The notes under the pieces: model-generated
The model's database searches: none
Told to the model about the DNA's origin: nothing
The model's input: only the letters and a program-made list of their open reading frames with translations
Translations under genes and position numbers: made by a program
Virus record (IMG/VR): IMGVR_UViG_3300031884_000002
Coordinates: 62,001-126,000 of that record
Reading direction: 5' to 3' (one strand)
Length of the DNA: 64,000 bases
Shown here: positions 2,296-57,042 of the stretch, in pieces
Layout: each line of letters opens with the position of its first letter
Position numbering within the stretch: the first letter of the stretch is position 1

Positions 2296-3744
2296 TTAGT
2301 TAGCATTAAAAATATGAGTAGTATAACCAGCACGATAGCCAGCAATATATAATACATGATTATCACTATCGGCGGCATCAACATCACCTTCAAGGTATCG
2401 AGCCGGATTATTATCAATCATATCATTGGCACCGGCTACAAATCCTTCAACAAAATGATTATTATTACTATTTGGAACTCGTTGTAACACCATCTGCTGA
2501 ATAATATAACTAACCACTTGAGCGAAAGTTAATTCTTTATTATTTTCTACTTTTTCGGCTTCTGAATCAGAAATATCAATCTGAAATATTTCTTCCATTG
2601 CCATAAGTAATTCAACGCCATCCAATGAGTCAAGTCCGCATGAATGAATCTTATCAGTTAATTTAATTTCAGGATTAACTCCTAAATCTCCATATAACTG
2701 TTCATGTGTCAAATCCCTAATTTGAGACCATATATTTTCAATAAACAATAAAGGTCTCTTTTCCACCTTGGAAATATGTGCTTCAACGGGAATTGGAGAT
2801 TCAATCGGAAAATTAGTTGTTAATGCATCAATTTCTTCATTGGCTTTCTTTTCAATTTCACAAATACATTCATTGTCTATATTGATAGGAGAAGCACACT
2901 TGCTACAATGACAATTTTCCATTACAGAACCACATCCATCACAATAATCATCTCCAACTGGAGTAGAAGGAACCGTAGTGTTTTCATTATTAAATACCAA
3001 TGGAAGATAATTCTCCAATTCTCCAATTACTTTATATTTACAAATACGATGTTTTTGAAACTCACAGTCCCTTGGAACTGTAACAAAATCTACGGGGTCA
3101 ATTTCAACCAGAATGACTCGTTTTCCATATTCTCTGGCATATTCCAAAGAACCGGCGTGAAGTCCGGGACCACATTCAGTTAAATAATTGTCACATACAG
3201 ATGAACGTTCAACTTCAATCGTGGAGCCAATAGTATTAAGAATACGTCCCTTTTCATCCACTTTACCTTGTAAAACTACAGTTTCGAGATTTCCAGTAAT
3301 AGACCAATAATCTTCATTAACCCCCTTATATGCAATTACAAATCCAGCATCCGTCAAAGTCAATCCCAAATGTTCCATAAATTTATAAGATTCTTCGATT
3401 GCCCTTTGCGATGGATTTTTACGAAGACGTTCAATATAATTGGCAATTGGTTGATAAGGAAATCCCGATTTAAGAAATGCCATAACCCGTTGAGCATCAA
3501 ATGTATTAATATGCCGACCATTATAAGTTACACCGGCAGTATTAACTGAAAGTTTTCCATTTGAATATTCCTCAACAACAGTTTTCATAGAAATCAATCG
3601 TTCAAGCAATTCCTTATTTCCAGCCTTGAATGCGTCTCGCAATTCATTCCATTTTGGATGGTCTGATTTTGCCGTTAGAATCTGTTTCCCATTATCAATA
3701 ATGAGAGTCAATGTTTCGTTAATTAAACTGGATGCGGTAATCAT
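2296..3744 (-). CDS. rIIB: rIIB-like protein fused to a Cys-rich linker and an acyl carrier protein domain
   Basis: rIIB motifs AYKGV, CGPGLHAGSLEYA and VEIDPVDFVTVPRDC..K.R.CKY; ACP motif GLDSLDGVELLMAMEEIFQIDISDSEAE; lies downstream of rIIA. Confidence 0.85.
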   Translation of the reverse strand: MITASSLINETLTLIIDNGKQILTAKSDHPKWNELRDAFKAGNKELLERLISMKTVVEEYSNGKLSVNTAGVTYNGRHINTFDAQRVMAFLKSGFPYQPIANYIERLRKNPSQRAIEESYKFMEHLGLTLTDAGFVIAYKGVNEDYWSITGNLETVVLQGKVDEKGRILNTIGSTIEVERSSVCDNYLTECGPGLHAGSLEYAREYGKRVILVEIDPVDFVTVPRDCEFQKHRICKYKVIGELENYLPLVFNNENTTVPSTPVGDDYCDGCGSVMENCHCSKCASPINIDNECICEIEKKANEEIDALTTNFPIESPIPVEAHISKVEKRPLLFIENIWSQIRDLTHEQLYGDLGVNPEIKLTDKIHSCGLDSLDGVELLMAMEEIFQIDISDSEAEKVENNKELTFAQVVSYIIQQMVLQRVPNSNNNHFVEGFVAGANDMIDNNPARYLEGDVDAADSDNHVLYIAGYRAGYTTHIFNAN

Positions 3745-3768: not shown

Positions 3769-4065
3769 ATATAGGTTATAGATTAAATGTCAAGTATCTT
3801 ATTTAGGTATAACGGTTGCAGTATTGGCATCAGTATCAAACTCTATAGTAATATATTCACCATATCTTACCCATTTATCAGCAAACTCTTCAAGTTCATG
3901 TCTAACATCATCATATGCTTGATGACGCTCTTCATCATCGACAATATTTTGAGTAGCAGAACCAGCAGCATCAATCGCTGATTGATATACTGCATCCGGA
4001 CTTTTGAATGTAACTTTAAACTTCATATGTTCGTATGATATAGGTTATAGATTAAATGTCAAGTA
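3769..4065. repeat. 28-bp direct repeat of promoter sequence flanking the 75-aa gene
   Basis: atataggttatagattaaatgtcaagta at 3769-3796 and 4038-4065. Confidence 0.9.
3799..4026 (-). CDS. hypothetical phage protein
   Basis: ORF with its own promoter at 4035-4062. Confidence 0.7.
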   Translation of the reverse strand: MKFKVTFKSPDAVYQSAIDAAGSATQNIVDDEERHQAYDDVRHELEEFADKWVRYGEYITIEFDTDANTATVIPK

Positions 4066-4286
4066 GGAATTACTTTCACTCTGCATAATTTGGAATCGGG
4101 AAAATAAGTTTTCATATAAAACTCAGGAGTTACTTCATTTTTATAGTTGTCAAGTTTAGTATAAAACTTATCCCTTCCAAAATGATGAAAATCATATCTA
4201 CAATCTTTGTTATATTCTGTCAATGGATGAATAATCATCCATCCTTCAATATGTTCATCAGTATTCATAATTATAGTTTCTAAACA

Positions 4287-6665
4287 TTAAGCCGTAACTA
4301 ATTCTTCCGGTTGAATATCAACTAAATCAACTACATCGGTTTTAACTGTTTCCGTATATTCATTATATAAATCAATCGACTTGATATATTTTACAAAATT
4401 ATTACGACTAATTTCATTATTGAGTGAACCATTTCTCATATTATGCCAATTAATATAAGGATAGATTTTAATGATTTCATTTTTAATATCTTCAATATTA
4501 ACCGTTGGTTTAATTCCTTTAACAAAATTACACCAAATATAAAGTTGTTGAATAGCATCAATAAATCCAGTTGTATCTTTATTTTTATTAAGAGAAAAAG
4601 AAGTATTAAACAATTTAATCAATACATGATTATCACCTAATTCTTTAGTTAGAAGTTCAGCCTCTTCAATGTTAATAACCGAAGTATCGGCATATTGATT
4701 AACCAAATCTTGAGGATTAATATTGGATGATATACTTTCTACAATAAACTTATCCAGCGGCAACCAAGTTTTATTTTCAATAGCATTCTCAAACCATTTG
4801 GCACCAGCGGTAATACTATCAATAATATAAACCCTCTCAATATCCAAGTTCAATTTATCATTGATAGTTTTAATATATCCCATCACATCACTAACATAGA
4901 TTTCATTATCATTAAACTTGATTTTATTTCCACGAAAATAATTCTTACGTCCACGTTTACTTGGTGCTTTATATAGAAAATAAACGTCTTCATCAATATC
5001 TTTAAATGCAACATCGGACTCTTCAACCTCTTCCGATACAAAATCCATATATTCCATCTTACGAATAACCGAAGTCCAACTACCACCCGAACGAGTTCCT
5101 TTATTAGCAGAATACCAAACCTTGGCATCGGCCAACAAATCGGATAGATTTAGAGTCGGCACAGTATCAAAATTATATTCTTTATAGAATGCAGATTTAA
5201 TATTATTGGTTTCAAAGTTCAATACATGAATAATCTTATATTGATAATTTTTAGAAAATAACAAATACCGCATAACCATAGCCATTCCGCTTCTCTTATT
5301 GGTATCGTTAATAACAACTCCAACCTTATCGGATGCTGTAATTCCATTATAAACATTAGATTTGCATTTAAAAGTTTTAATCCGGTTCTTCTTGGGACGA
5401 TAAGTAGTCATTACTGGAGCATATGGATTATAATCTTTTCCATCAAGGTTGTCCGAAGATAATGCATTATCAAATCGATTAATATGTCTAAAAGAAGCAT
5501 CTGTAATTGGAATACCATTCCAAATAAGTTGTCCCTTCAACGTATCTTCCAATTTAGATAAATTACCAGCCAAGATTTTAATATTATCAATGGCAATACT
5601 GCCATCTTCCGTTTCAATCGGCAAACCACTTCCGAAAATAGAATTATATATTTTCTTTGCTTCCCAGATATTAAAAGCATTGGAAAACTTTTCCTGCACT
5701 GATTCCTTGATTTTGACAATAATATCTTCAATTTTAGAAATTAAAGCCTCCAATGTCAATTTGGAATATTCTAATGCCTCTCTCGAAGGAACAAATTCCA
5801 AATCACCCATTTTATATTTTAAAACTAAATCATTAGAATGAAGCAAATCCAATAAAGCACGGCTCTTACTATCAATCGGCAATTGGTTGGAAATTTTATT
5901 AAAATCCAAGGGGTAAGAAACGTTTCCCATGTAAGCCACCGCAACCGCAGCATATCCAGATTTGGGACGAATTTCCCAACCATCACCTTTCAAGGTGGCT
6001 GGAGTAGTCCTGAATTTATCAATTTGTAATTGATATTCATCATTCAGATTAACGAGTTGAGGAAGCATTTCCCAATATTTAAAATAATTAGCGGCTTCCT
6101 GATGAATATCATACATCATTTCACTTTTAATAGGAATACAAACTTCAATGCCGGTAGGTTCATCAGAAACAATACGAGCCATTTCATAAATTTGAGGAAG
6201 TTTAGTTTTATCTCCCTTAATAATTTGATAAATTGCCTTTTCTCCTTTATTCCAAGAAGTAACTGTCATAGAATCACTTACACATTGAAAAGATTTTGAT
6301 CCAAATCCCCACGAACCATTAAAATCATTGGAATTTCTACGTGTAGATGTTCCCATATTACAATAAATTTTAACAATTTCCTCGGCATTCAATCCAGCAC
6401 CAAAATCTCGGAATTTAAGTGTCAAATCATTATATACAGGCAATGTAACTATAAAATCAGAAATTGGCTTCTTGGCTTCAATATGAGCGTCAAAAGCATT
6501 GTTAGCATATTCCCTCACAACTGCCAATTCTTTCTTGGAATACATTTTATCAGATAGACAATCCATAATTCTGGCTCTCTCAGCAGCATCAAAATCAACT
6601 TGTCCAATAAGTTTTACACCGGAACCATTCGTTTCAATCGTCTGTTGTGTTTCGTTGGATATCAT
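4287..6665 (-). CDS. rIIA: rIIA-like protein (N-terminal GHKL/Hsp90-like ATPase)
   Basis: REYANNAFDAH, RDFGAGL, STRRNSNDFNGSWGFGSKS and PSREALEY motifs; paired with rIIB. Confidence 0.88.
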   Translation of the reverse strand: MISNETQQTIETNGSGVKLIGQVDFDAAERARIMDCLSDKMYSKKELAVVREYANNAFDAHIEAKKPISDFIVTLPVYNDLTLKFRDFGAGLNAEEIVKIYCNMGTSTRRNSNDFNGSWGFGSKSFQCVSDSMTVTSWNKGEKAIYQIIKGDKTKLPQIYEMARIVSDEPTGIEVCIPIKSEMMYDIHQEAANYFKYWEMLPQLVNLNDEYQLQIDKFRTTPATLKGDGWEIRPKSGYAAVAVAYMGNVSYPLDFNKISNQLPIDSKSRALLDLLHSNDLVLKYKMGDLEFVPSREALEYSKLTLEALISKIEDIIVKIKESVQEKFSNAFNIWEAKKIYNSIFGSGLPIETEDGSIAIDNIKILAGNLSKLEDTLKGQLIWNGIPITDASFRHINRFDNALSSDNLDGKDYNPYAPVMTTYRPKKNRIKTFKCKSNVYNGITASDKVGVVINDTNKRSGMAMVMRYLLFSKNYQYKIIHVLNFETNNIKSAFYKEYNFDTVPTLNLSDLLADAKVWYSANKGTRSGGSWTSVIRKMEYMDFVSEEVEESDVAFKDIDEDVYFLYKAPSKRGRKNYFRGNKIKFNDNEIYVSDVMGYIKTINDKLNLDIERVYIIDSITAGAKWFENAIENKTWLPLDKFIVESISSNINPQDLVNQYADTSVINIEEAELLTKELGDNHVLIKLFNTSFSLNKNKDTTGFIDAIQQLYIWCNFVKGIKPTVNIEDIKNEIIKIYPYINWHNMRNGSLNNEISRNNFVKYIKSIDLYNEYTETVKTDVVDLVDIQPEELVTA

Positions 6666-6748
6666 AATTTAATAATTTGTTATGCTCCAAGAATATAGAT
6701 TTTAGATTAAAAGTCAATGAAAATATTTTCGATTTTTGTAATGTTACG

Positions 6749-7270
6749 TTTATTTATTTTGACTACCTTAATTAAGAATATTAACGAAGACATCGCCAAT
6801 CCCCCGAAATACTCAAAATATCCTTTATTTATTTTGACAGCGGCAATCGCAGAGCAACTGAATACCGATGGAGTCCCCGAAATACTAAAAATATCCTTTA
6901 TTTATTTTGACTCAATTGAAGAACTTGGTAATCCATAAAGATTTACACCCCGAAATACTCAAAATATCATTTATTTATTTTGACATTCGATATTTAAGGT
7001 CCTCAATATCAAGGTCATACCCGAAATACTCAAAATATCCTTTATTTATTTTGACATGATATGGGAGATTAAAAGTAATCTGGCTCCAGTTCCCGAAATA
7101 CTCAAAATATCCTTTATTTATTTTGACTTTATATTCCAGCCTAATGATTTTAATCGATCAATCCCGAAATACTCAAAATATCCTTTATTTATTTTGACCA
7201 ATTGCTCCATTCATATATTAATAAGGGAGTAGTACCCGAAATACTCAAAATATCCTTTATTTATTTTGAC
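6749..7270. CRISPR. CRISPR array 1: 7 full 36-bp repeats plus 1 partial, 7 spacers of 35-39 bp
   Basis: CCCGAAATACTCAAAATATCCTTTATTTATTTTGAC at 6803, 6876, 6949, 7020, 7092, 7163 and 7235 (two copies with single substitutions); partial copy at 6749-6763; internal stem TCAAAATA/TATTTTGA; unique spacers. Confidence 0.98.
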
Positions 7271-7459
7271 AGCCTTCCCGTAAAGGGTTTATTGTCAACT
7301 ATTTAAAAGGCTTTCCACGAGCGGCTATATCAGAAAAGATATAACCTAACTCATGCTAGGCATGTCGGATGCCTAAATATTTGTCAAAGAACAACTTACA
7401 TCTTGCGAGCGGTTATGCGTAACTATCTCATCACCACACCGCTCGCAAGAAAAATTAAA
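7271..7459. promoter_or_regulatory. CRISPR leader / possible scaffold RNA region
   Basis: Non-coding; 13-bp perfect inverted repeat TCTTGCGAGCGGT (7401-7413)/(7438-7450); third CGAGCGG copy at 7318-7324; 7-bp hairpin at 7357-7375. Confidence 0.7.
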
Positions 7460-7639
7460 TTACCATCCTCTACGTTTATTTTGACTACAAAGTTTTTTAT
7501 AATTCAACTCTTCTTCATTGGTTAATCTCCAATATGTAGCCCCCTCTATTCGTTTTTCTCGATGTTTTTTTTCAACAAAGGAATGAGCGTCTCTAAGAAT
7601 ATTATTTTTTATTTCTGTTTTATTTCTTCTGTGTCGCAT
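7460..7639 (-). CDS. 59-aa basic ORF overlapping the effector 3' end (below the ORF-track cutoff)
   Basis: Hand translation MRHRRNKTEIKNNILRDAHSFVEKKHREKRIEGATYWRLTNEEELNYKKLCSQNKRRGW*. Confidence 0.5.
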   Translation of the reverse strand: MRHRRNKTEIKNNILRDAHSFVEKKHREKRIEGATYWRLTNEEELNYKKLCSQNKRRGW

Positions 7640-8973
7640 AATGTAAACACCATACCTCGTGATTCAATGTTATTTTTTAAAGTAGATTTAAACTTGAACC
7701 AAGGGAATTCACCGGCTAATTTAAATCCTTTTGTTGTGTTTAGTACAATTTCATTACAACAAGTTCTTTCGGCGTGTTTACATAACATAGCTACAGTTTG
7801 TTTAATAAAAGCATCGGTTCTTTTTTCAAAATTGTTAGCGACAACTGCTGATTTGCTATTAAAACACGAAACATTCCCAGAACGACGTTCACATTTTCTA
7901 TCCTGTGAAAACCTATCAATATATTCTCTTCTTTTTTCTGACAAATGAACTCCATAATCCTCAGATAAAATTGATTGGAGTTCTTTTAATTTATTTTCTG
8001 GAATATGAGGATATAATTCTTTAACTGTATTAGCATCTAATACTTTGGATAATAATATCTTTTCCTCGGCTACCCATCTGTTAATATTATCTGCGTTATA
8101 CACTTGGAACTTTCTACCACCAACCCACATAGCAAGAAAAGTATCAGGGGCAGTAAATAACATCATTGTTCTATTATTTTTTTTGTCTAAAAGAGAACGT
8201 GGTTGTTTTACTACAATTTTAACTTTATAAGCAGCTTTTTGTTTGTTCCCATTATCATCTCGTTGAGTGATAGTATGATGATGAACTCCTCCTACTCGTT
8301 CACGAACAATCGCACAACTTCCCCATTTAGCATTTCCTTCCATTATTGCTTTCAAGTTTCCATGCTCTCTGCCAAAATTATCACCTCCCGCCAATCTTAA
8401 TTGAATTCTATTATTTATTCTTCCGCATCCAATTACAAATTCTATTACATAAGCAATAGACCCACAAGTATTTAACACTTTTATATCACAAGCCACAGAA
8501 GGTATTTCTAATGGTTGTCCTTCTTTATAGAAGGGTTGATTTTCCCGCCCAAGAAACACAAGCAACTTCTTTTTATTAAATAATTTAGTAATTTTATTCT
8601 GAAGAGTCGATGCGATTACTGATGATGGAATTAAAGGAAATAATTTCCGTGCTTCATTATAAATTTTCTTTTGTAGGGCATTATATTTTTCCTTAGATGG
8701 AGAAACATATTTTTCATCCAATCCACTTTTAACTGGTTCGCTCTTAAACAAGGATGATAACGCCCAATTATGAAACAAATCGTTTTGCTTAAATAATTCA
8801 TCTAATCGAGAATCAACTTCTTTCCATTCCATATTAAGAGGTTCTGCAATAGGTAGGGTAATGGAAAATACATTACTTACAGTATCCGCTGTAAACGCAT
8901 ATGGCTTGGGTTCCTGCCATAGCCAACCATCTCGAAGTTCGAGCAACCCTTTTTTATTTACTTCAAATTTCAT
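7609..8973 (-). CDS. Cas12f/TnpB-like type V effector, predicted nuclease-dead
   Basis: Adjacent to the array. YNEARKLFPLIPSS resembles the in-window TnpB segment YKIKELFPTLPSQ. GRENQPFYKEGQPLEIP and IMEGNAKWGSCAI resemble Cas12f WED/REC segments. RuvC-I position reads MLFTAPD (no IDLG) and RuvC-II reads IVLNTT (no E). FPWFKFKSTLKNNIESRG is followed by the stop, with no Zn finger or RuvC-III. Confidence 0.75.
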   Translation of the reverse strand: MKFEVNKKGLLELRDGWLWQEPKPYAFTADTVSNVFSITLPIAEPLNMEWKEVDSRLDELFKQNDLFHNWALSSLFKSEPVKSGLDEKYVSPSKEKYNALQKKIYNEARKLFPLIPSSVIASTLQNKITKLFNKKKLLVFLGRENQPFYKEGQPLEIPSVACDIKVLNTCGSIAYVIEFVIGCGRINNRIQLRLAGGDNFGREHGNLKAIMEGNAKWGSCAIVRERVGGVHHHTITQRDDNGNKQKAAYKVKIVVKQPRSLLDKKNNRTMMLFTAPDTFLAMWVGGRKFQVYNADNINRWVAEEKILLSKVLDANTVKELYPHIPENKLKELQSILSEDYGVHLSEKRREYIDRFSQDRKCERRSGNVSCFNSKSAVVANNFEKRTDAFIKQTVAMLCKHAERTCCNEIVLNTTKGFKLAGEFPWFKFKSTLKNNIESRGMVFTLCDTEEIKQK

Positions 8974-9860
8974 AACATTAAGGATTTAAGACCTTTATCG
9001 ATTTTATCCAATGGAATATAATCAACCGGACTACTATTAAAATTTACAATTGTTCCATTCGTAATATGATAAACATCAACTTGACTTAAATTTTTATAAG
9101 TTGAAATATATGCAAATCCGTGTTGCCATGCATTGGCACGCCCACCTTTAGTAGCAAATTCCGGAGAAAGATTACATAAACATCCAATCGACCACGACCA
9201 CATAATATCTTTATCTCCCGCTTCATTGATACGATTTCGTTTACTAAAATCTTTATAAGTAATAGCATGACTATCCGCATGAACAACTCTATGATTTTGC
9301 ATCATATATTGAGTTTCACTAAGTCCATTGCCATGCATAACATAGACATCTCCAACTTCATATATTGGACGAATAGAGCCTCCATTCCAAGGAATATAAG
9401 TTATATTAAGTTCTTTCCATATGGAACATTTACGAATACTTATACCATCTCCAAAACTTCGAAGCAAATCATTTTTTCTTAATTCAAATTCGGAACGATA
9501 TTCGTGATTACCTTCGATAAAAATAATTTCAGCATTGGGCACAAACTTACGAATAACACGGAGAAATTCTTTTCCCATATTAAGAGTTTCTTTCCACGCA
9601 GAAAAATGATATTCTCCATCGTCAGTCATAATCAATCCTCCCTTATTTATTTTAGCAGTCCATCCAGAGCACTGTTGATTATCAAACATATCTCCCATAA
9701 TAATAACTCTATCAGCACCATATTTTTTAATAATCTGCATCAATGGAGACAATGCAACTGGATCATGACGGCAATCTGGCAATTTAACCTTTCCATCTAC
9801 TAACAATGCTGCTTGAAGATGTAAATCTGGAATTGTAATTGTTGTCTCTAATTTATTCAT
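8970..9860 (-). CDS. calcineurin-like metallophosphoesterase
   Basis: PDLH, GDMFD and EGNHE motifs; ATGA overlap with the effector start. Confidence 0.85.
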   Translation of the reverse strand: MNKLETTITIPDLHLQAALLVDGKVKLPDCRHDPVALSPLMQIIKKYGADRVIIMGDMFDNQQCSGWTAKINKGGLIMTDDGEYHFSAWKETLNMGKEFLRVIRKFVPNAEIIFIEGNHEYRSEFELRKNDLLRSFGDGISIRKCSIWKELNITYIPWNGGSIRPIYEVGDVYVMHGNGLSETQYMMQNHRVVHADSHAITYKDFSKRNRINEAGDKDIMWSWSIGCLCNLSPEFATKGGRANAWQHGFAYISTYKNLSQVDVYHITNGTIVNFNSSPVDYIPLDKIDKGLKSLML

Positions 9861-9869
9861 TATTGAAGG

Positions 9870-9898
9870 AGTATATCAGGTTAATAAAAAAATGTCAA
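9870..9898 (-). promoter_or_regulatory. promoter of the phosphoesterase-effector operon (TTGACA-N17-TATACT)
   Basis: Near-consensus hexamers 9 nt before the ATG at 9860. Confidence 0.8.
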
Positions 9899-10456
9899 TA
9901 ATTTATTCGGGCACTATTTTAACGGTGACTTTTCCCGGTTGGGTAAGAAAACCTTCATTATGAAGATAATAAATAAAATCGGCACAGAACTCTTTTCGCT
10001 CATATCCTTCAAGTCCTAACATAGTCCAAGGATGATTACCATATATCGTAATTGCATTTCCATCTATTTTGAACTTTATATTGCGTAAGTTCATTTATAT
10101 CTTAACAATATCCTCATAATGATTATTACATTCGGCCTCTTTAATATAACGTTTAGCGGTTCGGTGTCGAGATTCATCTGGAAACTTTCTAATTACAGAA
10201 TACAATAATTCATTATAATTGTCAAGTAAGTTTTTAACGCAACGATGACACATCCAATATTCTGTTTTATTAGGTTCTCCTAAGTTTAAACAACCTACAG
10301 TAGTCCATTTGCATACAGAACAAGTTGGATTTGTTTTATTACAGACTTCATTTATTAAATCAGTCGGTGTAACTTTATTCATATTTTTAAAGAAACGTTT
10401 AAAATCATCAACCTCTTCATCAATTGCATTGTTATCCAAATCGTTATATTTATAAT

Positions 10457-10849
10457 TCATAATTTATTTTTTCTATCTTCTAAAATTGAATTAATAGCAG
10501 TTTTATAGATTTCTCCTAATTTTGGCTGTTTTAATATCATTTCCAAATGTTCGGTTTCACATTTACTGACTAATACATATTTAAATGGTCCATTACCATC
10601 TTTACCATATGTTCCCCACACTAATTTATTTTTAATAGTTTCTAATGAGTCGGTATCAGATAAGTTCCATTCTTCATATAATGAAGTATGTAAATCACCA
10701 CAACGACGAATATAAGAACAGCCACCGTCTGCTGCTATACTGGCACCATTGGCAAATGTATAAGAAACATAATCATGAGTATTACGAGAAAGGATAAAAA
10801 TATCCTCGTTTGGTTTCTCTAAAATCTTTATTGCATTTTGTATAATCAT
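10457..10849 (-). CDS. conserved phage hypothetical protein
   Basis: DGG..YIRR and WGTYGKDG motifs seen in phage proteins. Confidence 0.55.
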   Translation of the reverse strand: MIIQNAIKILEKPNEDIFILSRNTHDYVSYTFANGASIAADGGCSYIRRCGDLHTSLYEEWNLSDTDSLETIKNKLVWGTYGKDGNGPFKYVLVSKCETEHLEMILKQPKLGEIYKTAINSILEDRKNKL

Positions 10850-11073
10850 AATTTATTTATAAGTTTTCCATATAATTGGAAAACAAGGTATAAAACATAG
10901 ATACCAAGTGGTTTCCGTGGCATTTAATTCTACGATTTCGGTAAATGAATGATTGCTAGAATAACCGTGATTTTTTAACAAATCTCCACAATGGCAAGTT
11001 GGTTCGGATTTAACAGTTTTCCAGTATAATCCAATCCAACAATCCTGTTTAACAAATTGCATTTTCATATTTC

Positions 11074-11532
11074 TTAATTCCAATAAGAATATAGTAACCA
11101 CTTGGGTTCTTCGGTGTATTTAATATTATATTTTTTACAAAAATCGGTAATTATAGTTGGGTCTTGTTTAGTTATTTCTTGCAATTCCAACGGATATCCA
11201 CGATTTGCCGTTTGTTCAGTTCCTCTAATTCCTATAATATACATAGGACATTCGTGATGACAATGAGTAAACACTTCAACCGGACATTTATTATTTTTTA
11301 CAATTTCACGTTGCTCGTCAAAATATTTATCAATTATTTCTTGGGAAGGACGAATACCATTTAAATATTCTCCATTTTCATCATAAATTTCGAAGGATGG
11401 TTTAAATTTCGAAACTTCACGTAAATACCATTCTTCAAAATCCCCATCAAAGGGTTCATTGTCCCACGGAAATTCAGTTCCTTCCTCAAAGGGAATTCCA
11501 TAACAAATATTAGCATCAGTTGATTGTCCCAT
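11074..11532 (-). CDS. hypothetical protein
   Basis: 152-aa ORF behind the promoter at 11542-11569. Confidence 0.7.
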   Translation of the reverse strand: MGQSTDANICYGIPFEEGTEFPWDNEPFDGDFEEWYLREVSKFKPSFEIYDENGEYLNGIRPSQEIIDKYFDEQREIVKNNKCPVEVFTHCHHECPMYIIGIRGTEQTANRGYPLELQEITKQDPTIITDFCKKYNIKYTEEPKWLLYSYWN

Positions 11533-11627
11533 AATTTTAAAAGTATATCAGAGTTTAGATTAAAGTCAATCAAAAAATATTTTCATTTTGTCTGACGTTT
11601 TTTGCTTTGACGTTATATTTATAGTGT

Positions 11628-12812
11628 ATGAATGATGCATCAAAATTAAACCAAAGTCAAGAGAAAGAAGTTATATGGGAAGAAAGAAATTATACAGAAC
11701 CAGAGAAGAATTACTTGAACAGCAACGTGCCAGAGCAAAACGATATTACAACAAAAACAAACAAAGAATATCCGCTGTCAGAATGGCCAATTACTATAAA
11801 GCCAATAAAAAGCGGAATATACAAAATAATAAATAAAATTAATAATAAATATTATGTAGGAAGTGCTAAAAATATAAGAAACAGATGGAAAAAGCACTTT
11901 ACTGATCTAAATACAAATCGACATCCCAACTATCATTTGCAGAGCGCATATAATAAATATGGAAAAGATAGTTTTATTTTTACATTTATAGAAGAAGTCG
12001 AATCTAATAAAAAACTGTTATATAAAGTAGAATATAAATATTTAAGAATTGCTAAAAAAGAAAAACCAAATGTATATAATTTAAGGTTTAAACCGGCTGG
12101 AGGACCAACCGATACATATGGGCGATGGAAAATATCAGAATATAACAAAACAAGAGTATTTACGAAAGAAACAAGAGCAAAAATGTCGGCGGCATTAAAA
12201 AGAAGAAAAGTAACAAACGAAACACGACAAAAACTAAGTGATACTAATAAATTATATTATTCTATACCTGAAAACAGACAAAAACTCATAGAAATGAGTA
12301 AAAAAGTAAATCGGCAGAAAATAGGAATTAAAAATAGAGACAAAACTATATATAAATTTATAAATGTAAATACAGGAGAAATATTCGAAGGAATTAGATA
12401 TGATTTTAGAACAAAATATAACTTAAGGAAAAGCAGTGTTAATGGAGTTATTAAAAAACGAAGAAAGACAGTTAGTGGCTGGAGATTATTTGATAATTCA
12501 TATGTTCCAATTGTCGGAAAAAATAACAAATATAAAAATAAAGAAGAATCAAATTTTTCCAAACGCAAAATTAAAAATAGACCTTCAAAAGAGGAACTTC
12601 TCACAATGATATGGAATAAATCCACAATTCAAATAAGTAATGAGTTTTGCGTGAGCAAAGGAGCAATTAGAAAATGGTGTATAGGATACAATATACCACT
12701 TCCTCCTGTTGGTTATTGGATTAAATTAAAATATGGATATAAAGATGAATGTCTTAAAATAAAAGAAGAACAATTTAAAAAATTTAATCTTGTTTGTAAT
12801 TTTGATTTATAA
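11628..12812 (+). CDS. GIY-YIG homing endonuclease with NUMOD-type repeats
   Basis: SGIYKIINKINNKYYVGSAKNIRNRW and LQSAYNKYG. Confidence 0.92.
   Translation: MNDASKLNQSQEKEVIWEERNYTEPEKNYLNSNVPEQNDITTKTNKEYPLSEWPITIKPIKSGIYKIINKINNKYYVGSAKNIRNRWKKHFTDLNTNRHPNYHLQSAYNKYGKDSFIFTFIEEVESNKKLLYKVEYKYLRIAKKEKPNVYNLRFKPAGGPTDTYGRWKISEYNKTRVFTKETRAKMSAALKRRKVTNETRQKLSDTNKLYYSIPENRQKLIEMSKKVNRQKIGIKNRDKTIYKFINVNTGEIFEGIRYDFRTKYNLRKSSVNGVIKKRRKTVSGWRLFDNSYVPIVGKNNKYKNKEESNFSKRKIKNRPSKEELLTMIWNKSTIQISNEFCVSKGAIRKWCIGYNIPLPPVGYWIKLKYGYKDECLKIKEEQFKKFNLVCNFDL
11675..11836 (+). CDS. overlapping basic peptide MGRKK-1 (53 aa)
   Basis: MGRKKLYRTREELLEQQRARAKRYY...; first 20 aa identical to the paralog at 58580, differing only by synonymous changes. 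Confidence 0.75.
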   Translation: MGRKKLYRTREELLEQQRARAKRYYNKNKQRISAVRMANYYKANKKRNIQNNK

Positions 12813-13779
12813 TTTTCAAAGACCACGATTTTCCAATGCTATTAGAGTAAAATGGAATTATAGGACTTACAACAATTCCTTCGGCTGGTTTATTGTTGGG
12901 ATATAATTGTTTATCGGCGATTTGTCTAAAATATTCTACTGTATGAATGTTTTTATCAAAAACAAACCGGTCAATGAGCGGAACAATAGGAATGTTCAAT
13001 GTATTGCATAAAGTATTTAACTCATCCCAAGTATATAAATTACGAGTATCCAAATCTTTTGCTCTGAATATTCTAAGTTGCCGATCCTTTAATTCTAATC
13101 TGTTTCCATTCAATCCGGTGCCGATAGACTCTGCTTGAATAGCAATATTTTTATTTAATTGAATTAGTTTAGATTTAATATCATATTTATCAACCATTTG
13201 ATATGGAAATCCTTCTCCTTCTTTTAACTTCAGGCGACGACTACAAGCGTCAAATTCGGAATTATTGTAGATAAAAGTAGTGCTACTACCATCCATCTTT
13301 TGGGTTATAACTACTTCTTTACCATCTAATTCCAATAATGCTTCAGGATAACTTAATAAATTGAGTTCATCACTAATGGAAATTAGCGAAGATGGAAATC
13401 CACCTTTAGTTTCTCCATTATTTATAAAAGTCTCCGGTTTTTCATATTTCAATACTCCCAATATAGAAGTAACATCATCCCCAATATTATATTCTCCATT
13501 CGGGAGAATAGACAATGGTTGAACTAACCCGCTTGATGGAGTACCTTTGAACCGAGCATTCCAAACACGATATTTCTGCTTTTCCATGAATTTGAAATTT
13601 TCTGTTGGTGGCACAATACTATCAATCTCAATAAAAACTACCTTATCTCCATTTTTAAATTGTCCCTTGGACACCACAACCGGCCATTCTTTAATTTTAG
13701 CACATTCAAGGCGCAAAACTTCCGGATTTGGATGTGGTGTTATAGAGTGTATAGTTTCTATGTATGCTAATTTACTCAT
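12784..13779 (-). CDS. ATP-dependent RNA ligase, DRB0094-like family
   Basis: N-terminal OB-like segment GDKVVFIEIDS; motif I KMDGSS; EGIVV; KIIN..Y. Confidence 0.88.
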   Translation of the reverse strand: MSKLAYIETIHSITPHPNPEVLRLECAKIKEWPVVVSKGQFKNGDKVVFIEIDSIVPPTENFKFMEKQKYRVWNARFKGTPSSGLVQPLSILPNGEYNIGDDVTSILGVLKYEKPETFINNGETKGGFPSSLISISDELNLLSYPEALLELDGKEVVITQKMDGSSTTFIYNNSEFDACSRRLKLKEGEGFPYQMVDKYDIKSKLIQLNKNIAIQAESIGTGLNGNRLELKDRQLRIFRAKDLDTRNLYTWDELNTLCNTLNIPIVPLIDRFVFDKNIHTVEYFRQIADKQLYPNNKPAEGIVVSPIIPFYSNSIGKSWSLKIINQNYKQD

Positions 13780-29237: not shown

Positions 29238-30242
29238 TGTTATTATAAAATTAAAGAATTATTTCCAACTCTCCCATCTCAATTTATTATAAAAATGGAG
29301 CAAGATGTTATTTCAACGTATAAATCCATAAAATCTAATAAACATAAACTGGAGTTTCCGGCTATTAAAAAATCATTATCCATTCAACTTGACAAGCGTA
29401 TCTATAAGTGGATAGACAGGAACCATATAAAAATCACCACTCTAAATAAACAAGCAATCTGTTCTTTTAATGCTTATAATAAATTAAAAGAGATGGACTT
29501 TTCTAAATTAAAAGACCCAAAATTGTTTTATAAAAATAAACAATTTTACTTGTCCTTGATATTTGATGATAATAAACAATTTACTGATAATAACAAAGTA
29601 TTAGGAATTGACTTAGGATTAAAACGAATAGCAACATTAAGCAATGGAATTATATTCAAAGGAAACGAGTTTAACAAACATAAACGTAAAATTAGATGGA
29701 ATAAACGTAAATTACAATCCAAGAAAAATAATTCTCATTCTGCTCGTAAAAAATTAAAATCATTAAGAAGAAAAGAAACCAATTTTAGTAAAAATTACAT
29801 ACATAATTTAACAAAAAATATAATTATAAATAATAAAGAAAATATTTTAGTAATCGAAGATTTAAGTAAAATTAAAGTTAAGAACAAAGGAAAGAGATTT
29901 AACAATCGGTTAAGTCAATTACCATTTTTTAATTTTAGAACCATACTAACATACAAGGCACAACTATATGGAAAAATAGTTGAAACGGTTAACCCTGCTT
30001 ACACCAGTCAAATAGACCATAGAGGATTGACAAGTGGAACACGTAGAGGATGTAGATATTATGGTTCAGACGGAACAATGTTAGATGCCGATGTAAATGC
30101 GGCACTAAATATTGGAAATCGGTATAAAGATAATAAATCTTTAACCAAACACTCCATTTCGTGCTGTAAAGTACTTGATGGACAGGTGAACGTCAACTCA
30201 CCAATCGTCTCTATCAGTCAGAGGCAAGCACCGACCCTTTAG
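29238..30242 (+). pseudogene. tnpB: 5'-truncated TnpB (IS200/IS605 family)
   Basis: GIDLG, IEDL, YTSQ and DADVNAALNI. Homology to the 46660 TnpB extends upstream of the ATG at 29295 (CYYKIKELFPTLPSQ) to a TAA at 29235, so about 45 N-terminal aa are missing. Confidence 0.8.
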
Positions 30243-46659: not shown

Positions 46660-47799
46660 CTAAAGGGATAGGTGCTTGAACGGCCCCGAGGAGCGGGACT
46701 TATATTCGTATGGCGTATTGACTGACGCCTGCCCATAAGTCAGATTTGTGGTCTGTGATACGGGATGTTTGGACATTTTTCCAATGTTGATAGCAGCATT
46801 GATGTCCGAGTCATATATCATTCCATTTACTTTAGAGTAAAATCTACAACCTCTTCTTTCACCTTCGACTTTACCCGTTACCGAGTCTCGTTGTGATGTA
46901 TAGGAAGGGCAAACAAACAGAACAGTTTTACCTTGGTTCTGTGCCTTATAGGTTATTACTCTACGGAGTTCAAACATTGGAACTTGTGATATACTTCTTT
47001 TATTTTGGTATTTGTGTTTCTTTCTTTTTATGCTCTTGAGGTTTTCAAGACAAATTGTATCGGCTTCCGTTCGGAGAACGGCATTGGAAATTAGATGGGT
47101 TTGGTTCTTGTTCTTGTTTCGTTCTTTTCTTCGTAACGAATAACGAAGTTTCCTACGGGCACTCTTCGTTCCCTTGGATTTGAGTTTGTCTTTCAAGTAT
47201 CTCAATCTTCGTTTTTCACCGTTGAACTTCTTATCAATAATAAGTCGCCCATCCGAACAAGCAGCACTCCTACGGATGCCGATGTCCACTCCTAATGCCA
47301 ATCGTTGTTTGAGTTTTTCAACTTTGTTTTCAAAAGAGAAAGCGATACATACTTTATCATTATCCACATATATTAGAGGGTCTTGGTATGCGTATTTTTC
47401 CATCAACTCTTTCAGTCGTGGATAGACAACAAACTTGAAGGTCTGTCGTTTTCCTGTGGTCGTGATGCGAATAGAAAACTTATCTGGGATTGAGTAAAGT
47501 CGTTTATCCAATCTCATTGAGAGGTTCTTTTTTACAATGAGAGTTTTCTTATGCTTATTGGATTTCGCAGACCGATAGGAAGCAAGAACTTCTTGTTCTG
47601 CTTTGATTATTACTTGGGATGGGATTTCTGGATTTGACTTACGAACATTTTTATACACTTTGGAGTGAAGAACTACAAGAGAGTTCTTTGTTTCTGGTAG
47701 TTGTTCCTTGGAAGCAAGGTTGAATACAAACCTTTCGTATTCAAGCAACTTTTTCAGTTCTTGACAATCTCCTAAAAGTGTGGTATTGTAACTCAACAT
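46660..47799 (-). CDS. tnpB: TnpB RNA-guided nuclease (Zn-finger-less)
   Basis: GVDIG, LENL, YTSQ and DSDINAAINI. Confidence 0.92.
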   Translation of the reverse strand: MLSYNTTLLGDCQELKKLLEYERFVFNLASKEQLPETKNSLVVLHSKVYKNVRKSNPEIPSQVIIKAEQEVLASYRSAKSNKHKKTLIVKKNLSMRLDKRLYSIPDKFSIRITTTGKRQTFKFVVYPRLKELMEKYAYQDPLIYVDNDKVCIAFSFENKVEKLKQRLALGVDIGIRRSAACSDGRLIIDKKFNGEKRRLRYLKDKLKSKGTKSARRKLRYSLRRKERNKNKNQTHLISNAVLRTEADTICLENLKSIKRKKHKYQNKRSISQVPMFELRRVITYKAQNQGKTVLFVCPSYTSQRDSVTGKVEGERRGCRFYSKVNGMIYDSDINAAINIGKMSKHPVSQTTNLTYGQASVNTPYEYKSRSSGPFKHLSL

Positions 47800-55774: not shown

Positions 55775-57042
55775 GTGAATGCTCCCAACCTCTAAAGAGG
55801 TTGGGCTTCTATCCTAACTTGCGTTAGAAAAAGAGTCCATTCCGACTCTTAAAATATTTCTTGCAGCATTCAAATCCCTACCAATGTTAAGATTACAAAT
55901 AGGACATTTGTGTTGTCTTTCTGACAACTCTTTCTTAACAATGGTTCCGCATCCCGAGCATATTTGGGTCGTGTATCGTGGGTCAACATTTACTACTTCA
56001 CAGCCAGCTTCTACCGCTTTACTATGGAGCATTTGTCTAAATGCTGCCCAACCCGAGTCCAATATGCTTCTATTCAACGCTCGCCAATTGTCATTCAACA
56101 TTTGGCTTGGTCGAATATCTTCCACACAAATATGAGAATACTCGTTCACTAGTTTCTTGCTCAACTTGTGTAGGAAATCTTTTCGTTGGTTCTTCACTCT
56201 ACAATGGAGTTTAACCAATTCTCTCTTGGTCTTTATCTTCGTCTTGTCATCCTTCGGTTTAAGTTTCAGTTTGGAATACTTACCTTGGACTTTGGAAAGT
56301 TTCTCCTGTGATTGTTTAAGAAAATGAGGATTAGGAATAGTGGTTCCATCCGAACAGGTCACAAAGTCAATACATCCAACATCAATCCCAACTGCTCGTT
56401 TCCATTTTCGTTTTTCAATCTTCACTTCAACTTCACACGAGAAAATAGCATACCAATGTGTGCCTTCACGCTTAATGGTCAAGGTCTTTACCTTGCCTTC
56501 CATTGGTCGGTGGAAGTTAATACGAACGTCTCCAATCTTGGACATCCACATTTTCTTCTTTCCTATCTTAAATCCTGTCTGTGGAAAGGTGAAGGAGTCA
56601 TACCGGTCATAGGACTTAAAGCGTGGGAAACCTGCTTTTCCACTCTTATCCTTCAATCTGCGGAAGAACCCAAGATAGGCAAGGTCAAGTCGGGCAGATA
56701 CGTTTTGGAGGACTTGCGAATGGACTGGAGTTTTCAGTTCCATATCCTTAATTATTTTACAACAATCAAAGTGAGTTAAAGTTTTCTTGGTCTTCTTGTA
56801 GTGGTCGTTTCGCTTCTCAAGGAGTTGGTTATAAACGTAGCGACAAGTATTCAGCGTCTCTTGGAGACGGATAGCACTGCCTCCTTTGGGAGACAATTTG
56901 AACTTGTAATTGCGTTTTACTTTCATTCTATAACATACATATCATCCACTTTAAGGAAAATGTTATTTTATTTCTGTTTCCTTAATATGGTCGTCATTCA
57001 TCCCCTTGGCTAAAGCCGAAGGGGCTTTCTGACTCCAAAAAT
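55775..57042 (-). mobile_element. IS1341-like element (tnpB only)
   Basis: Minus-strand left end TTAC|...AAAG-hairpin ccccttcggctttagccaagggg; right end GAAG-hairpin cccaacctctttagaggttggg...TCAC. Confidence 0.88.
55814..56926 (-). CDS. tnpB: canonical TnpB with HTH and Zn ribbon
   Basis: YKFKLSP, GFPRFK, GIDVG, VEDI, CSGC...CPIC and RDLNAARNI. Confidence 0.96.
   Translation of the reverse strand: MKVKRNYKFKLSPKGGSAIRLQETLNTCRYVYNQLLEKRNDHYKKTKKTLTHFDCCKIIKDMELKTPVHSQVLQNVSARLDLAYLGFFRRLKDKSGKAGFPRFKSYDRYDSFTFPQTGFKIGKKKMWMSKIGDVRINFHRPMEGKVKTLTIKREGTHWYAIFSCEVEVKIEKRKWKRAVGIDVGCIDFVTCSDGTTIPNPHFLKQSQEKLSKVQGKYSKLKLKPKDDKTKIKTKRELVKLHCRVKNQRKDFLHKLSKKLVNEYSHICVEDIRPSQMLNDNWRALNRSILDSGWAAFRQMLHSKAVEAGCEVVNVDPRYTTQICSGCGTIVKKELSERQHKCPICNLNIGRDLNAARNILRVGMDSFSNAS

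What the first reader, a model, noticed from the sequence alone, without database searches (positions are those of the whole stretch)
7271..7488. Leader and possible anti-repeat give conflicting clues to array orientation
Seen: (a) a tripartite CGAGCGG motif (13-bp inverted repeat at 7401-7450 plus a copy at 7318) on the right of the array, while the degenerate repeat is on the left, suggesting spacers are added on the right. (b) The plus-strand repeat ends in a 3' hairpin and TTGAC, the same pentamer that ends two TnpB right ends in this window just before their guides, suggesting plus-strand crRNA. (c) 7465-7485 (atcct-ctacg-tttattttgac) resembles the repeat 3' half, so a minus-strand read-through from the effector gene would carry an 11+5 bp anti-repeat. 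tacgtttattttgactac (7471-7488) also nearly duplicates the terminal partial repeat (6745-6766). Inference: a tracrRNA-like RNA derived from a terminal repeat, and a leader used by host Cas1-Cas2.
Basis: partly seen in the sequence, partly recalled or inferred. Interest (0 to 1): 0.7.

Follow-up and report, generated by a model that had tools for sequence, protein, structure and literature searches.

The report
Phage dead-Cas12f guide scaffold and array

Summary

- **Scaffold.** Window 7271-7459 is a conserved, roughly 190-nt structured RNA. Across nine related sequences, 96.6% of cells pair, against 32-43% in slid controls, and 18 pairs carry compensatory changes. It runs straight into repeat 1.
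- **Strand.** G-U pairs number 18 on the minus strand and 2 on the plus strand. All flanking genes are on the minus strand, and the repeat end next to the spacer (TTCGGG) is invariant. All three favour minus-strand scaffold and crRNA, not plus-strand crRNA.
- **Polarity.** Two contigs encoding an identical effector share their distal spacers and differ in their proximal ones. The phage has no cas1 or cas2.
- **Anti-repeat.** The element that covaries with the repeat is a loop, TTGACA, at 7293-7298. It pairs with the last scaffold base plus the first five repeat bases (7266-7271).
7465-7485 lies in the last codons of a conserved 59-aa ORF and is not repeat-like in any relative.
- **Effector.** The 454-aa protein is Cas12f-like but ends before the zinc finger and RuvC-III. 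It always follows an intact Mre11/SbcD-type phosphoesterase gene.

This is a new variant of the known phage and dead-Cas12f CRISPR systems.

The parts
8970..9860 (-). Metallophosphoesterase gene (296 aa, Mre11/SbcD/PdeM-like). It overlaps the start of the effector gene.
   Evidence: Pfam Metallophos at E 7.8e-6, with weak PdeM and SbcD-related hits. A homologous gene sits directly upstream of the effector in L008, L021 and L022, and the DxH, GD, GNH[DE], H and H motifs are invariant across them.
7609..8973 (-). Effector P0001, 454 aa: a Cas12f-like protein that ends just after the fifth RuvC strand. It has no zinc-finger (TNB) domain and no RuvC-III, and it carries Asn at the RuvC-II Glu position.
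   Evidence: The AF2 model (pLDDT 79) matches Cas12f structures at E 2e-17. PADLOC Cas12f and Cas12u3 HMMs hit at E 1e-8 to 4e-9. The family profile hits solved Cas12f chains at E 7.6e-18, and the family's 'ydd' aligns to the catalytic 'MED'. The alignments show where the protein ends.
7460..7639 (-). Small basic ORF of 59 aa, in a different frame from the effector and overlapping its stop codon.
   Evidence: Translation. It is conserved as protein in L008, L020, L010 and L022, at 34-59% identity, with an AH.FVEKKHREKR...YWR motif. It has no Pfam, NCBIfam or PADLOC hit.
7271..7459 (-). Conserved structured scaffold RNA (tracrRNA/omegaRNA-like), which is also the leader side of the array.
   Evidence: Alignment A3 of nine sequences, RNAalifold and pair counts: 96.6% of cells paired against 32-43% for slid partners, and 18 of 39 pairs with compensatory changes. 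G-U cells number 18 on this strand against 2 on the other.
7293..7298 (-). Scaffold loop TTGACA. This is the anti-repeat supported by covariation (5' side of helix H5).
   Evidence: It pairs with 7266-7271 in 9 of 9 sequences, and 4 of 6 pairs show compensatory changes (TTGAC/GTCAA, GGTCAG/CTGACC, TTGAGG/CCTCGA). It crosses H4 outer, so the two form a pseudoknot.
7266..7271 (-). The last scaffold base plus the first five bases of repeat 1 (T+GTCAA): the 3' side of helix H5.
7364..7368 (-). H2 loop CCGAC, invariant in all nine sequences. It is a candidate partner of the invariant repeat 3' end (U)UCGG(G). This is an inference only.
   Evidence: The loop is invariant and the repeat end TTCGGG is invariant. 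The analogy is with the pseudoknot between the tracrRNA and the repeat 3' end reported for Cas12 and TnpB guide RNAs (preprint 10.1101/2025.01.20.633832).
6803..7270 (-). CRISPR array of seven 36-nt repeats (minus-strand reading GTCAAAATAAATAAAGGATATTTTGAGTATTTCGGG) separated by six spacers of 35-37 nt; about 36 nt of further sequence separates the seventh repeat from the partial eighth copy.
   Evidence: The repeat forms a hairpin. Relatives have different 36-nt repeats with the same plan, and every one ends in TTCGGG.
6746..6763 (-). Partial, degenerate eighth repeat at the old end of the array. It shares a 14-nt exact match (6753-6766) with 7475-7488.
7465..7488 (-). Repeat-like stretch inside the small ORF. 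It is not conserved in relatives and is not interpreted here as an anti-repeat.

Best explanation
The locus is a phage-borne type V-F-like CRISPR module read entirely on the minus strand. Its order is metallophosphoesterase gene, truncated Cas12f-like gene, small basic ORF, a roughly 190-nt structured scaffold RNA, and the array.

The scaffold (7271-7459) appears to do two jobs. As DNA it is the leader side, where new spacers enter. As RNA it is the tracrRNA/omegaRNA-like body of the guide.

The scaffold is physically joined to repeat 1, so the first unit is a natural single-guide RNA. Its internal loop UUGACA (7293-7298) pairs with the 5' end of the repeat (GUCAA) and forms a pseudoknot with helix H4. 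Later repeat-spacer units would use the same contact in trans. Probably a second contact forms between the invariant H2 loop CCGAC and the invariant repeat 3' end UCGG, next to the guide.

The guide lies 3' of the repeat, as in all Cas12 and TnpB RNAs. The protein lacks RuvC-III and the zinc finger, so it most likely binds DNA without cutting it. Cutting, if any occurs, would fall to another protein.

The repeat-like 7465-7488 is coding sequence of the small ORF. Together with the partial repeat at 6746-6766, it is best read as a trace of past recombination at the edges of the array, not as a functional anti-repeat.

Shown by the data: the anatomy, conservation, covariation, spacer polarity, fold and truncation. 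Inferred: the transcription direction, tracr function in trans, use of host Cas1-Cas2, and binding without cleavage.
For: - **Same plan in relatives.** Six related metagenomic lineages have the same layout.
- **Scaffold covariation.** 39 pairs, 96.6% of cells paired against 32-43% in slid controls, and 0 of 500 shuffles reached the observed score.
- **Helix H5 to the repeat start.** 100% paired, with 4 of 6 pairs compensatory.
- **Strand.** 18 G-U cells on the minus strand against 2 on the plus strand, giving 96.6% against 92.0% paired. One H3 pair alternates between U-G (6 sequences) and C-G (3 sequences). Repeat hairpins fold better in the effector direction in 4 of 5 repeat types. All ORFs from 4059 to 11573 are on the minus strand.
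- **Polarity.** L022 and L023 encode the identical effector. They share most of their distal spacers and differ in all of their 4-5 scaffold-proximal spacers. Degenerate repeats sit at the distal end in the window, L008, L020, L010 and L023.
- **Orphan units.** A scaffold with a single repeat (L026, L027) and a second array behind a truncated scaffold (L023) fit a scaffold-repeat-guide transcript and a scaffold acting in trans.
- **Effector.** Cas12f-like by fold and by sequence profile, with C-terminal truncation.
- **No adaptation genes.** The complete 354-kb phage has no cas1 or cas2.
Against: - No RNA data: no RNA run was listed, so transcription direction, RNA ends and processing are all inferred.
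- The covariation rests on only about six independent lineages.
- Helix H5 is shown only for the scaffold-adjacent repeat, that is, in cis. Pairing in trans is assumed.
- The scaffold's TTGAC region also resembles the repeat's own 3' hairpin arm. Shared ancestry or gene conversion, rather than selection for pairing, could therefore contribute to the co-variation.
- The H2-loop contact involves only invariant bases, so it has no covariation support.
- No protospacer was found, so the PAM side could not be used as an independent orientation test.
- The residue at the RuvC-I position could not be aligned with confidence.
Confidence: 0.65

Rival explanations
1. crRNAs come from the plus strand (repeat ending in a hairpin plus TTGAC, then the spacer). 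A minus-strand read-through from the effector gene carries 7465-7485 as an anti-repeat and forms a tracrRNA-like duplex.
For: The plus-strand repeat does end in a hairpin plus TTGAC. This resembles the 3' ends of the phage's own TnpB RNAs. The repeat-like stretch and its 14-nt twin at the far end of the array are beyond chance, at about 1 in 1000.
Against: - The stretch lies in the last codons of a protein-conserved ORF.
- It has no repeat-like counterpart in L008, L020, L010 or L022.
- The plus-strand TTGAC end is not conserved among relatives, whereas the minus-strand TTCGGG end is.
- G-U pairs favour the minus strand.
- The leader end and every neighbouring gene point the other way.
- A plus-strand crRNA would place the orphan scaffold of L026/L027 downstream of its guide, which does not fit Cas12 or TnpB guide architecture.
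Confidence: 0.05
2. The effector uses short crRNAs alone (repeat hairpin plus guide, as Cas12a or Cas12m do). Under this reading the conserved 7271-7459 RNA is only a structured leader transcript, serving for example in processing, stability or attenuation of read-through from the effector operon. It would not be part of the RNP.
For: Every repeat type has its own hairpin followed by a conserved tail next to the spacer. This is the usual crRNA-only layout. Helix H5 competes with that hairpin. Arrays of 7-11 units keep well-conserved repeats.
Against: - A protein of 454 aa or less in the Cas12f/TnpB fold normally needs a large RNA scaffold (established knowledge of Cas12f and TnpB structures; see the hits).
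- The scaffold sits where omegaRNAs and Cas12f tracrRNAs sit. In L021 it starts inside the 3' end of the effector gene.
- Orphan scaffold-plus-one-repeat units exist.
- The scaffold covaries with the repeat.
Confidence: 0.2
3. The covarying inverted repeats act at the DNA level, for example as recognition sites for the integrase or host factors at the leader-repeat junction. On this view there is no functional structured RNA.
For: The 3' part of the scaffold (H3 3' side, H4, TTGAC loop) always lies immediately upstream of an array, including the second array of L023, which lacks the 5' part. Leaders are known to carry integration signals.
Against: Seven helices with compensatory changes, and a clear excess of G-U over A-C, point to selection on RNA pairing on one strand. 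No known leader has such an architecture (own knowledge).
Confidence: 0.07

Closest known systems
CRISPR-associated nuclease-dead Cas12f (dCas12f) cluster, described beside the dCas12f-sigmaE systems (Nature 2026, PMC13472631)
   Same: A Cas12f-like fold with a C-terminal truncation that removes part of the RuvC site. It is encoded beside CRISPR arrays. A covarying putative guide RNA lies in the intergenic region just upstream of the array. The guide is at the 3' end of an omegaRNA-like stem-loop scaffold.
   Different: The known examples are bacterial (one is a Chitinophagaceae MAG) and are proposed to repress efflux operons. Here the system sits in a 354-kb lake phage and in related uncultured phage contigs only; it was not found in 185,579 reference genomes. 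It has no sigma or HTH neighbour detected. It always follows a metallophosphoesterase gene. Its sequence matches the solved dCas12f only weakly (E 7e-6, N-terminal part).
Type V-F CRISPR-Cas12f (Cas14) with tracrRNA
   Same: A miniature effector of the same fold, 36-nt repeats, and a long structured RNA encoded between the effector gene and the array that contacts the repeat.
   Different: No RuvC-III or zinc finger, and Asn at the RuvC-II Glu position. No cas1, cas2 or cas4. The scaffold is contiguous with repeat 1 rather than a separate tracrRNA gene. The demonstrated scaffold-repeat pairing is only 6 bp, and it involves the repeat's 5' end.
Phage-encoded CRISPR systems of huge phages, including a 'dCas14' (Nature 2020, PMC7162821)
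   Same: Huge phages carry compact arrays and new V-F and V-U variants. Almost all lack Cas1, Cas2 and Cas4. One Cas14 lacking a catalytic residue was proposed to repress a host gene.
   Different: That paper, as far as it was read, describes no scaffold RNA, array orientation or phosphoesterase partner. Whether its proteins are related to P0001 was not tested.
TnpB-omegaRNA, TldR (nuclease-dead TnpB repressors) and TranC intermediates
   Same: An RNA scaffold abuts or overlaps the 3' end of the protein gene, with the guide at the RNA 3' end and a pseudoknotted scaffold. TldR likewise lost RuvC function through C-terminal truncation (bioRxiv 10.1101/2023.11.30.569447).
   Different: Those systems carry one fixed guide and no spacer turnover. 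Here there is a multi-spacer array with polarised gain of spacers. The phage's own six TnpB genes match P0001 only over a short N-terminal motif.

Membership tests
CRISPR array | Three or more near-identical direct repeats of 23-50 nt separated by unique spacers of similar length | tested here: met
   Seven 36-nt repeats and unique spacers of 35-37 nt.
CRISPR array | Polarised spacer turnover: new spacers at the leader end, with shared old spacers and degenerate repeats at the other end | tested here: met
   Shown in relatives. L022 and L023 have the identical effector, share most of their distal spacers and have different proximal spacers. Degenerate repeats are distal in five arrays. For the window's own array, only the degenerate-repeat criterion could be checked.
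Type V-F effector (Cas12f) | WED-REC-RuvC architecture similar to solved Cas12f | tested here: met
   Foldseek E 2e-17 to AsCas12f. PADLOC Cas12f HMM at E 1.6e-8. Family profile against PDB Cas12f at E 7.6e-18.
Type V-F effector (Cas12f) | Complete RuvC catalytic triad (D, E, D) | tested here: not met
   The protein ends about 35 residues after the RuvC-II strand, so the RuvC-III helix is absent. Asn413 stands at the position aligned to the catalytic Glu. The RuvC-I position is unresolved.
Type V-F effector (Cas12f) | Zinc-finger target-nucleic-acid-binding domain inserted in RuvC | tested here: not met
   No Cas12f1-like_TNB hit for P0001, although the phage's six TnpB genes do hit it. The chain ends before that point.
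Type V-F locus | Adaptation genes cas1, cas2 and cas4 in the locus | tested here: not met
   No Cas1 or Cas2 match anywhere in the complete 353,772-bp phage record. cas4 was not searched.
tracrRNA | An RNA encoded near the array with an anti-repeat complementary to the repeat | tested here: inconclusive
A 6-bp helix with covariation joins scaffold loop 7293-7298 to the start of repeat 1. It was seen only in cis, and no RNA data exist.
tracrRNA | Expressed as a stable small RNA that co-purifies with the effector | not testable with these tools
   No RNA run was listed.
dCas12f (exapted Cas12f homologs) | Cas12f-like fold with a C-terminal truncation that removes part of the RuvC site | tested here: met
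   The definition comes from PMC13472631.
dCas12f-sigmaE subgroup | Operonic rpoE (sigmaE) or HTH partner | tested here: not met
   The neighbours are a metallophosphoesterase and small ORFs with no sigma or HTH hit.
TnpB / omegaRNA (IS200/IS605) | A single omegaRNA whose guide is the DNA flanking the transposon end, with no repeat-spacer array | tested here: not met
   An array is present. The profile comparison to the phage's TnpBs aligns only 35 residues. The orphan one-repeat units in L026 and L027 resemble this layout.

The most novel reading that the evidence does not exclude
The truncated Cas12f-like protein, guided by a scaffold-plus-crRNA, is only the targeting half of a two-part interference module. 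Its invariably co-encoded Mre11/SbcD-like metallophosphoesterase, with intact motifs, would supply the nuclease. Possibly the conserved small basic protein helps. That would be a type V system in which cleavage has been handed to an unrelated nuclease. The phage would use it against competing phages or the host, loading it with spacers through the host's adaptation machinery.
Probability: 0.2. Interest if true: 0.8.

Novelty: new variant of a known kind. Interest (0 to 1): 0.55.

Why it matters
The orientation puzzle is largely settled by comparative evidence, without any experiment, although RNA data are still needed to confirm it. The analysis also shows what the 'leader' is: a guide-RNA scaffold fused to the first repeat of an array that still gains spacers.

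Recent work proposes that RNA-guided systems moved between transposon single-guide omegaRNAs, split tracrRNA/crRNA pairs and chimeric single guides. This locus has the layout expected of an intermediate in that history.

It also adds a phage lineage of nuclease-dead miniature Cas12f-like proteins with a conserved phosphoesterase partner. If the two proteins work together, that would be a new interference mode and a very compact programmable DNA binder with a defined natural guide.

Tried and rejected
- **RNA evidence.** No RNA run was listed for 6740-7640.
- **Laying metagenome contigs on 6400-7900**. Contigs break at every repeat, so they gave no information on spacer variants or on excision between the 14-nt twins.
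- **Protospacers.**
  - No W spacer matched elsewhere in the phage genome; only 14-15-nt chance matches appeared.
  - Three spacer cores gave no exact hit in viral contigs.
  - Three whole spacers gave no hit in the phage collection.
  - One L022 spacer matches 27 nt of L028, but only its repeat-distal part, so it was not used for PAM inference.
- **Searches for relatives.**
  - A short scaffold pattern in viral contigs gave six chance hits with no relation.
  - The protein search in viral contigs found nothing, and the wide alignment was too diverse to scan with.
  - Genome contigs gave nothing by scaffold pattern or by protein.
- **Other copies.** There is no other scaffold or array copy in the phage genome.
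- **hhalign of the family against the phage's TnpBs** aligned only a 35-residue N-terminal motif, so the RuvC-I residue could not be placed.
- **Co-folding of P0001 with the phosphoesterase** returned 'no answer', which is neither support nor evidence against.
- **Rfam** found no family in the window.
- **Possible link to TnpB RNA ends.** The invariant scaffold linker GTTGTTCTTTGA might be related to the TnpB RNA 3' end GTTGTTGAC. This was rejected as unsupported, because loosely similar strings are common in this AT-rich genome.
- **Intrinsic terminator.** The 13-bp inverted repeat has no U-tract after it on either strand, so this reading was rejected.
- **Wider family.** The 284 proteins of about 400-450 aa, mostly from GC-rich phage-like contigs, carry an N-terminal zinc ribbon that P0001 lacks. 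The two contexts whose DNA could be read (L012, L013) list no CRISPR-associated genes; their DNA was not scanned for repeats. They were not pursued further.

Full report
**Setting.** The window is bases 62001-126000 of a 353,772-bp virus record rated complete, with 30% G+C, recovered from lake water. The finding lies in a block of minus-strand genes running from 4059 to 11573. That block includes rIIA at 4287-6665. The phage also carries six TnpB genes, three of them in the window.

**Checking the observation.**
- There are seven 36-nt repeats at 6803-7270, with spacers of 35-37 nt. Point-mutated copies and a partial eighth copy lie at the left end.
- A perfect 13-bp inverted repeat sits at 7401-7413/7438-7450, with folding z-score about -7. 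A third CGAGCGG lies at 7318-7324.
- On the plus strand the repeat ends in an 8-bp hairpin plus TTGAC.
- The phage's TnpB 3' regions end in ...CCCTTTAGGG...TTGAC, and similarity between copies stops right after TTGAC.
- 7465-7485 resembles the repeat. The 14-mer at 7475-7488 is identical to 6753-6766, a match reached by 3 of 3000 shuffles and 3 of 3000 random genomic windows.

**The effector.** The 454-aa ORF at 7609-8973(-), called P0001, has no Pfam, PHROG or direct PDB sequence hit. An exhaustive search found 284 relatives of about 400-450 aa.
- An AlphaFold model built on their alignment (pLDDT 79) matches Cas12f structures at E 2e-17. It also matches a solved nuclease-deactivated Cas12f and TnpB.
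- PADLOC Cas12f and Cas12u3 models hit the N-terminal half.
- The family profile hits solved Cas12f chains by sequence at E 7.6e-18.

In that last alignment the family's 'v-v-y-d-d' lies on the Cas12f 'I-Q-M-E-D' RuvC-II motif, and P0001 has Asn there. The protein stops about 35 residues later, after one helix and one strand. The zinc-finger domain and the RuvC-III helix are therefore absent. I conclude that it is a Cas12f homolog that is very probably nuclease-dead. The RuvC-I residue could not be placed.

**Related loci.** Close relatives of P0001 exist only on uncultured contigs: P0003 (79% identity), P0153 (73%), P0154 (53-54%), P0155 (46%) and a fragment, P0004. None was found in IMG/VR by protein or in 185,579 reference genomes.

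The contigs that extend far enough show the same order:
1. A metallophosphoesterase gene, overlapping or lying just upstream of the effector start.
2. The effector.
3. A small ORF overlapping the effector stop in another frame. It is absent in L021.
4. A conserved non-coding stretch of 150-190 nt.
5. Immediately after that, an array of 36-nt repeats that differ between lineages but always end in TTCGGG in the effector direction.

A DNA pattern drawn from the non-coding stretch recovered further copies. One follows a different gene (L024). Others are 'orphan' units in which the stretch precedes a single repeat (L026, L027) or three repeats (L028), with the same distal flank in each. L023 has a second array 4.5 kb downstream, preceded by only the 3' part of the stretch.

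**The non-coding stretch is a structured RNA.** Nine sequences from about six independent lineages align well. RNAalifold and explicit pair counting give seven helices with 39 pairs. Of the cells, 96.6% pair, against 32-43% when partners are slid by 1-3 columns. Eighteen pairs carry compensatory changes, and 0 of 500 shuffles reach the observed covariation score.

The third CGAGCGG is the 3' strand of helix H3.

One helix, H5, joins a loop inside H4 (TTGACA, window 7293-7298) to the last scaffold base plus the first five bases of repeat 1 (7266-7271). It pairs in all nine sequences, and four of its six pairs change on both sides. The observed forms are TTGAC/GTCAA, GGTCAG/CTGACC and TTGAGG/CCTCGA, with a G-U in the L008 group. 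H5 crosses the outer stem of H4, so the two form a pseudoknot. This loop is the element that actually co-varies with the repeat.

**Strand.** For the same pair list there are 18 G-U cells on the effector (minus) strand. Only 2 positions would be G-U on the other strand, which gives 96.6% against 92.0% paired. One H3 pair is U-G in six sequences and C-G in three. Repeat hairpins fold better in the effector direction in four of five repeat types.

Two further points agree. The gene context is uniformly minus-strand. The orphan scaffold-repeat units make sense only as scaffold, then repeat, then guide. Together these favour minus-strand scaffold and crRNA, with the guide 3' of the repeat as in all Cas12 and TnpB RNAs.

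In relatives it becomes TCGAC, GTCAG or TCGAG, in step with the scaffold loop. The minus-strand end next to the spacer, TTCGGG, never changes.

By analogy with the pseudoknot between the tracrRNA and the repeat 3' end described for Cas12 and TnpB guides, the invariant H2 loop CCGAC (7364-7368) is a candidate partner for UCGG. Both sides are invariant, so this remains an inference.

**Polarity of the array.** L022 and L023 encode the identical effector and scaffold. Most of their distal spacers are the same, including decayed short ones. Their five and four scaffold-proximal spacers are entirely different. This is the classical signature of gain at the scaffold end.

Two other comparisons fit but could also arise by deletion. 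L010 has one more proximal spacer than L011, and L028 has three repeats against one in L026. Degenerate repeats sit at the distal end in five arrays.

The phage has no cas1 or cas2, which agrees with what is reported for almost all huge-phage CRISPR loci (PMC7162821). Use of host adaptation proteins is plausible but untested.

**The proposed anti-repeat.** 7465-7488 lies within the last eight or so codons of a 59-aa ORF at 7460-7639(-). That ORF is conserved as protein in five loci, at 34-59% identity, with a VEKKHREKR...YWR motif. The corresponding DNA in L008, L020, L010 and L022 bears no resemblance to the repeats of those loci.

On the minus strand the stretch is same-sense to the repeat, so it cannot pair with minus-strand crRNA. 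Its exact 14-nt twin at the old end of the array, including bases outside the repeat on both sides, suggests an old recombination or duplication event at the array borders. I found no evidence for any function.

**Comparison with known systems.** Three groups are relevant.
- Nuclease-dead, C-terminally truncated Cas12f homologs are known. Most work with sigmaE, but a distinct cluster lies beside CRISPR arrays, with a covarying putative guide RNA just upstream of the array (PMC13472631).
- Huge phages are known to carry V-F variants, including a 'dCas14', and to lack adaptation genes.
- TldR proteins are nuclease-dead TnpB repressors.

The present locus fits this kind. It differs in being phage-borne and having an array with spacer turnover. 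Its scaffold is contiguous with, and base-paired to, repeat 1. It also has two conserved partners: a small basic protein, and a metallophosphoesterase whose catalytic motifs are invariant. I found no description of a Cas12-phosphoesterase pairing in the papers read. A co-folding job returned no verdict.

**Verdict.** The locus is a new variant of a known kind. The main uncertainty is the complete absence of RNA and target data.

Noticed in passing
window 7460-7639 (-): A 59-aa basic ORF overlaps the effector's stop codon in another frame. It is conserved as protein in five loci and absent in L021. It has no family hit. It could be an RNA-binding accessory protein or a translationally coupled partner.
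   Followed up: partly
window 8970-9860 (-); L008 705-1625; L021 1188-2111; L022 5105-6001: A metallophosphoesterase gene with all catalytic motifs intact always lies immediately upstream of the dead Cas12f-like gene. This holds even between phages of very different G+C content and only 46% effector identity.
   Followed up: partly
window 29295-30242 (+), 46660-47799 (-), 55814-56926 (-); three more elsewhere in the genome: The phage carries six TnpB genes. Several have omegaRNA-like 3' ends (a CCCTTTAGGG hairpin followed by ...TTGAC), and similarity between copies stops right after TTGAC.
   Followed up: partly
L026 1999-2221 (-), L027, L028 6653-6875 (-): These are orphan scaffold units not preceded by an effector gene. 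H1 is replaced by a different hairpin. They are followed by one repeat (L026, L027) or three repeats (L028) and then the same flanking sequence. Either a one-repeat unit grew into an array, or an array collapsed.
   Followed up: partly
L023 about 7700-8100: A second array lies 4.5 kb downstream of the first. It is preceded only by the 3' part of the scaffold (H3 inner stem onward) and shares two short spacers with the first array.
   Followed up: no
L022 spacer 4 against L028 7345-7371: One spacer of the L022 array matches 27 consecutive bases of a contig from the same sample, but only over its repeat-distal part. It may be a diverged protospacer in a related phage.
   Followed up: partly
window 7438-7450 and 7316-7325: The 5' arm of H1 (CGAGCGG) could pair with the 3' strand of H3 (CCGCTCG) instead of with its own 3' arm. 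In L010 the two change together (CGAGA/TCTCG). This may be an alternative fold or a switch.
   Followed up: no
window 2296-3744 (-), 11628-12812 (+), 12784-13779 (-): Neighbouring genes include a 482-aa protein with a phosphopantetheine-attachment (PP-binding) domain, which is unusual in a phage. There is also a GIY-YIG/NUMOD3 homing endonuclease and an RNA ligase.
   Followed up: no
run X2, record 22 (645 nt, depth 3.8), laid on window 6764-6800 and 6985-7019: A low-depth contig matches two spacer-flanking pieces of the array on opposite strands with several differences, and otherwise carries unrelated sequence. It may be a variant array or an assembly chimera.
   Followed up: no
proteins P0005-P0152; loci L012, L013: P0001 belongs to a wider family of several hundred truncated Cas12f-like proteins of 400-450 aa. 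They come mostly from GC-rich, phage-like or ArsR-rich contexts and carry an N-terminal CxxC...CxxC ribbon that P0001 lacks. The gene lists of the contexts seen show no CRISPR-associated genes; the DNA was not scanned for arrays.
   Followed up: partly
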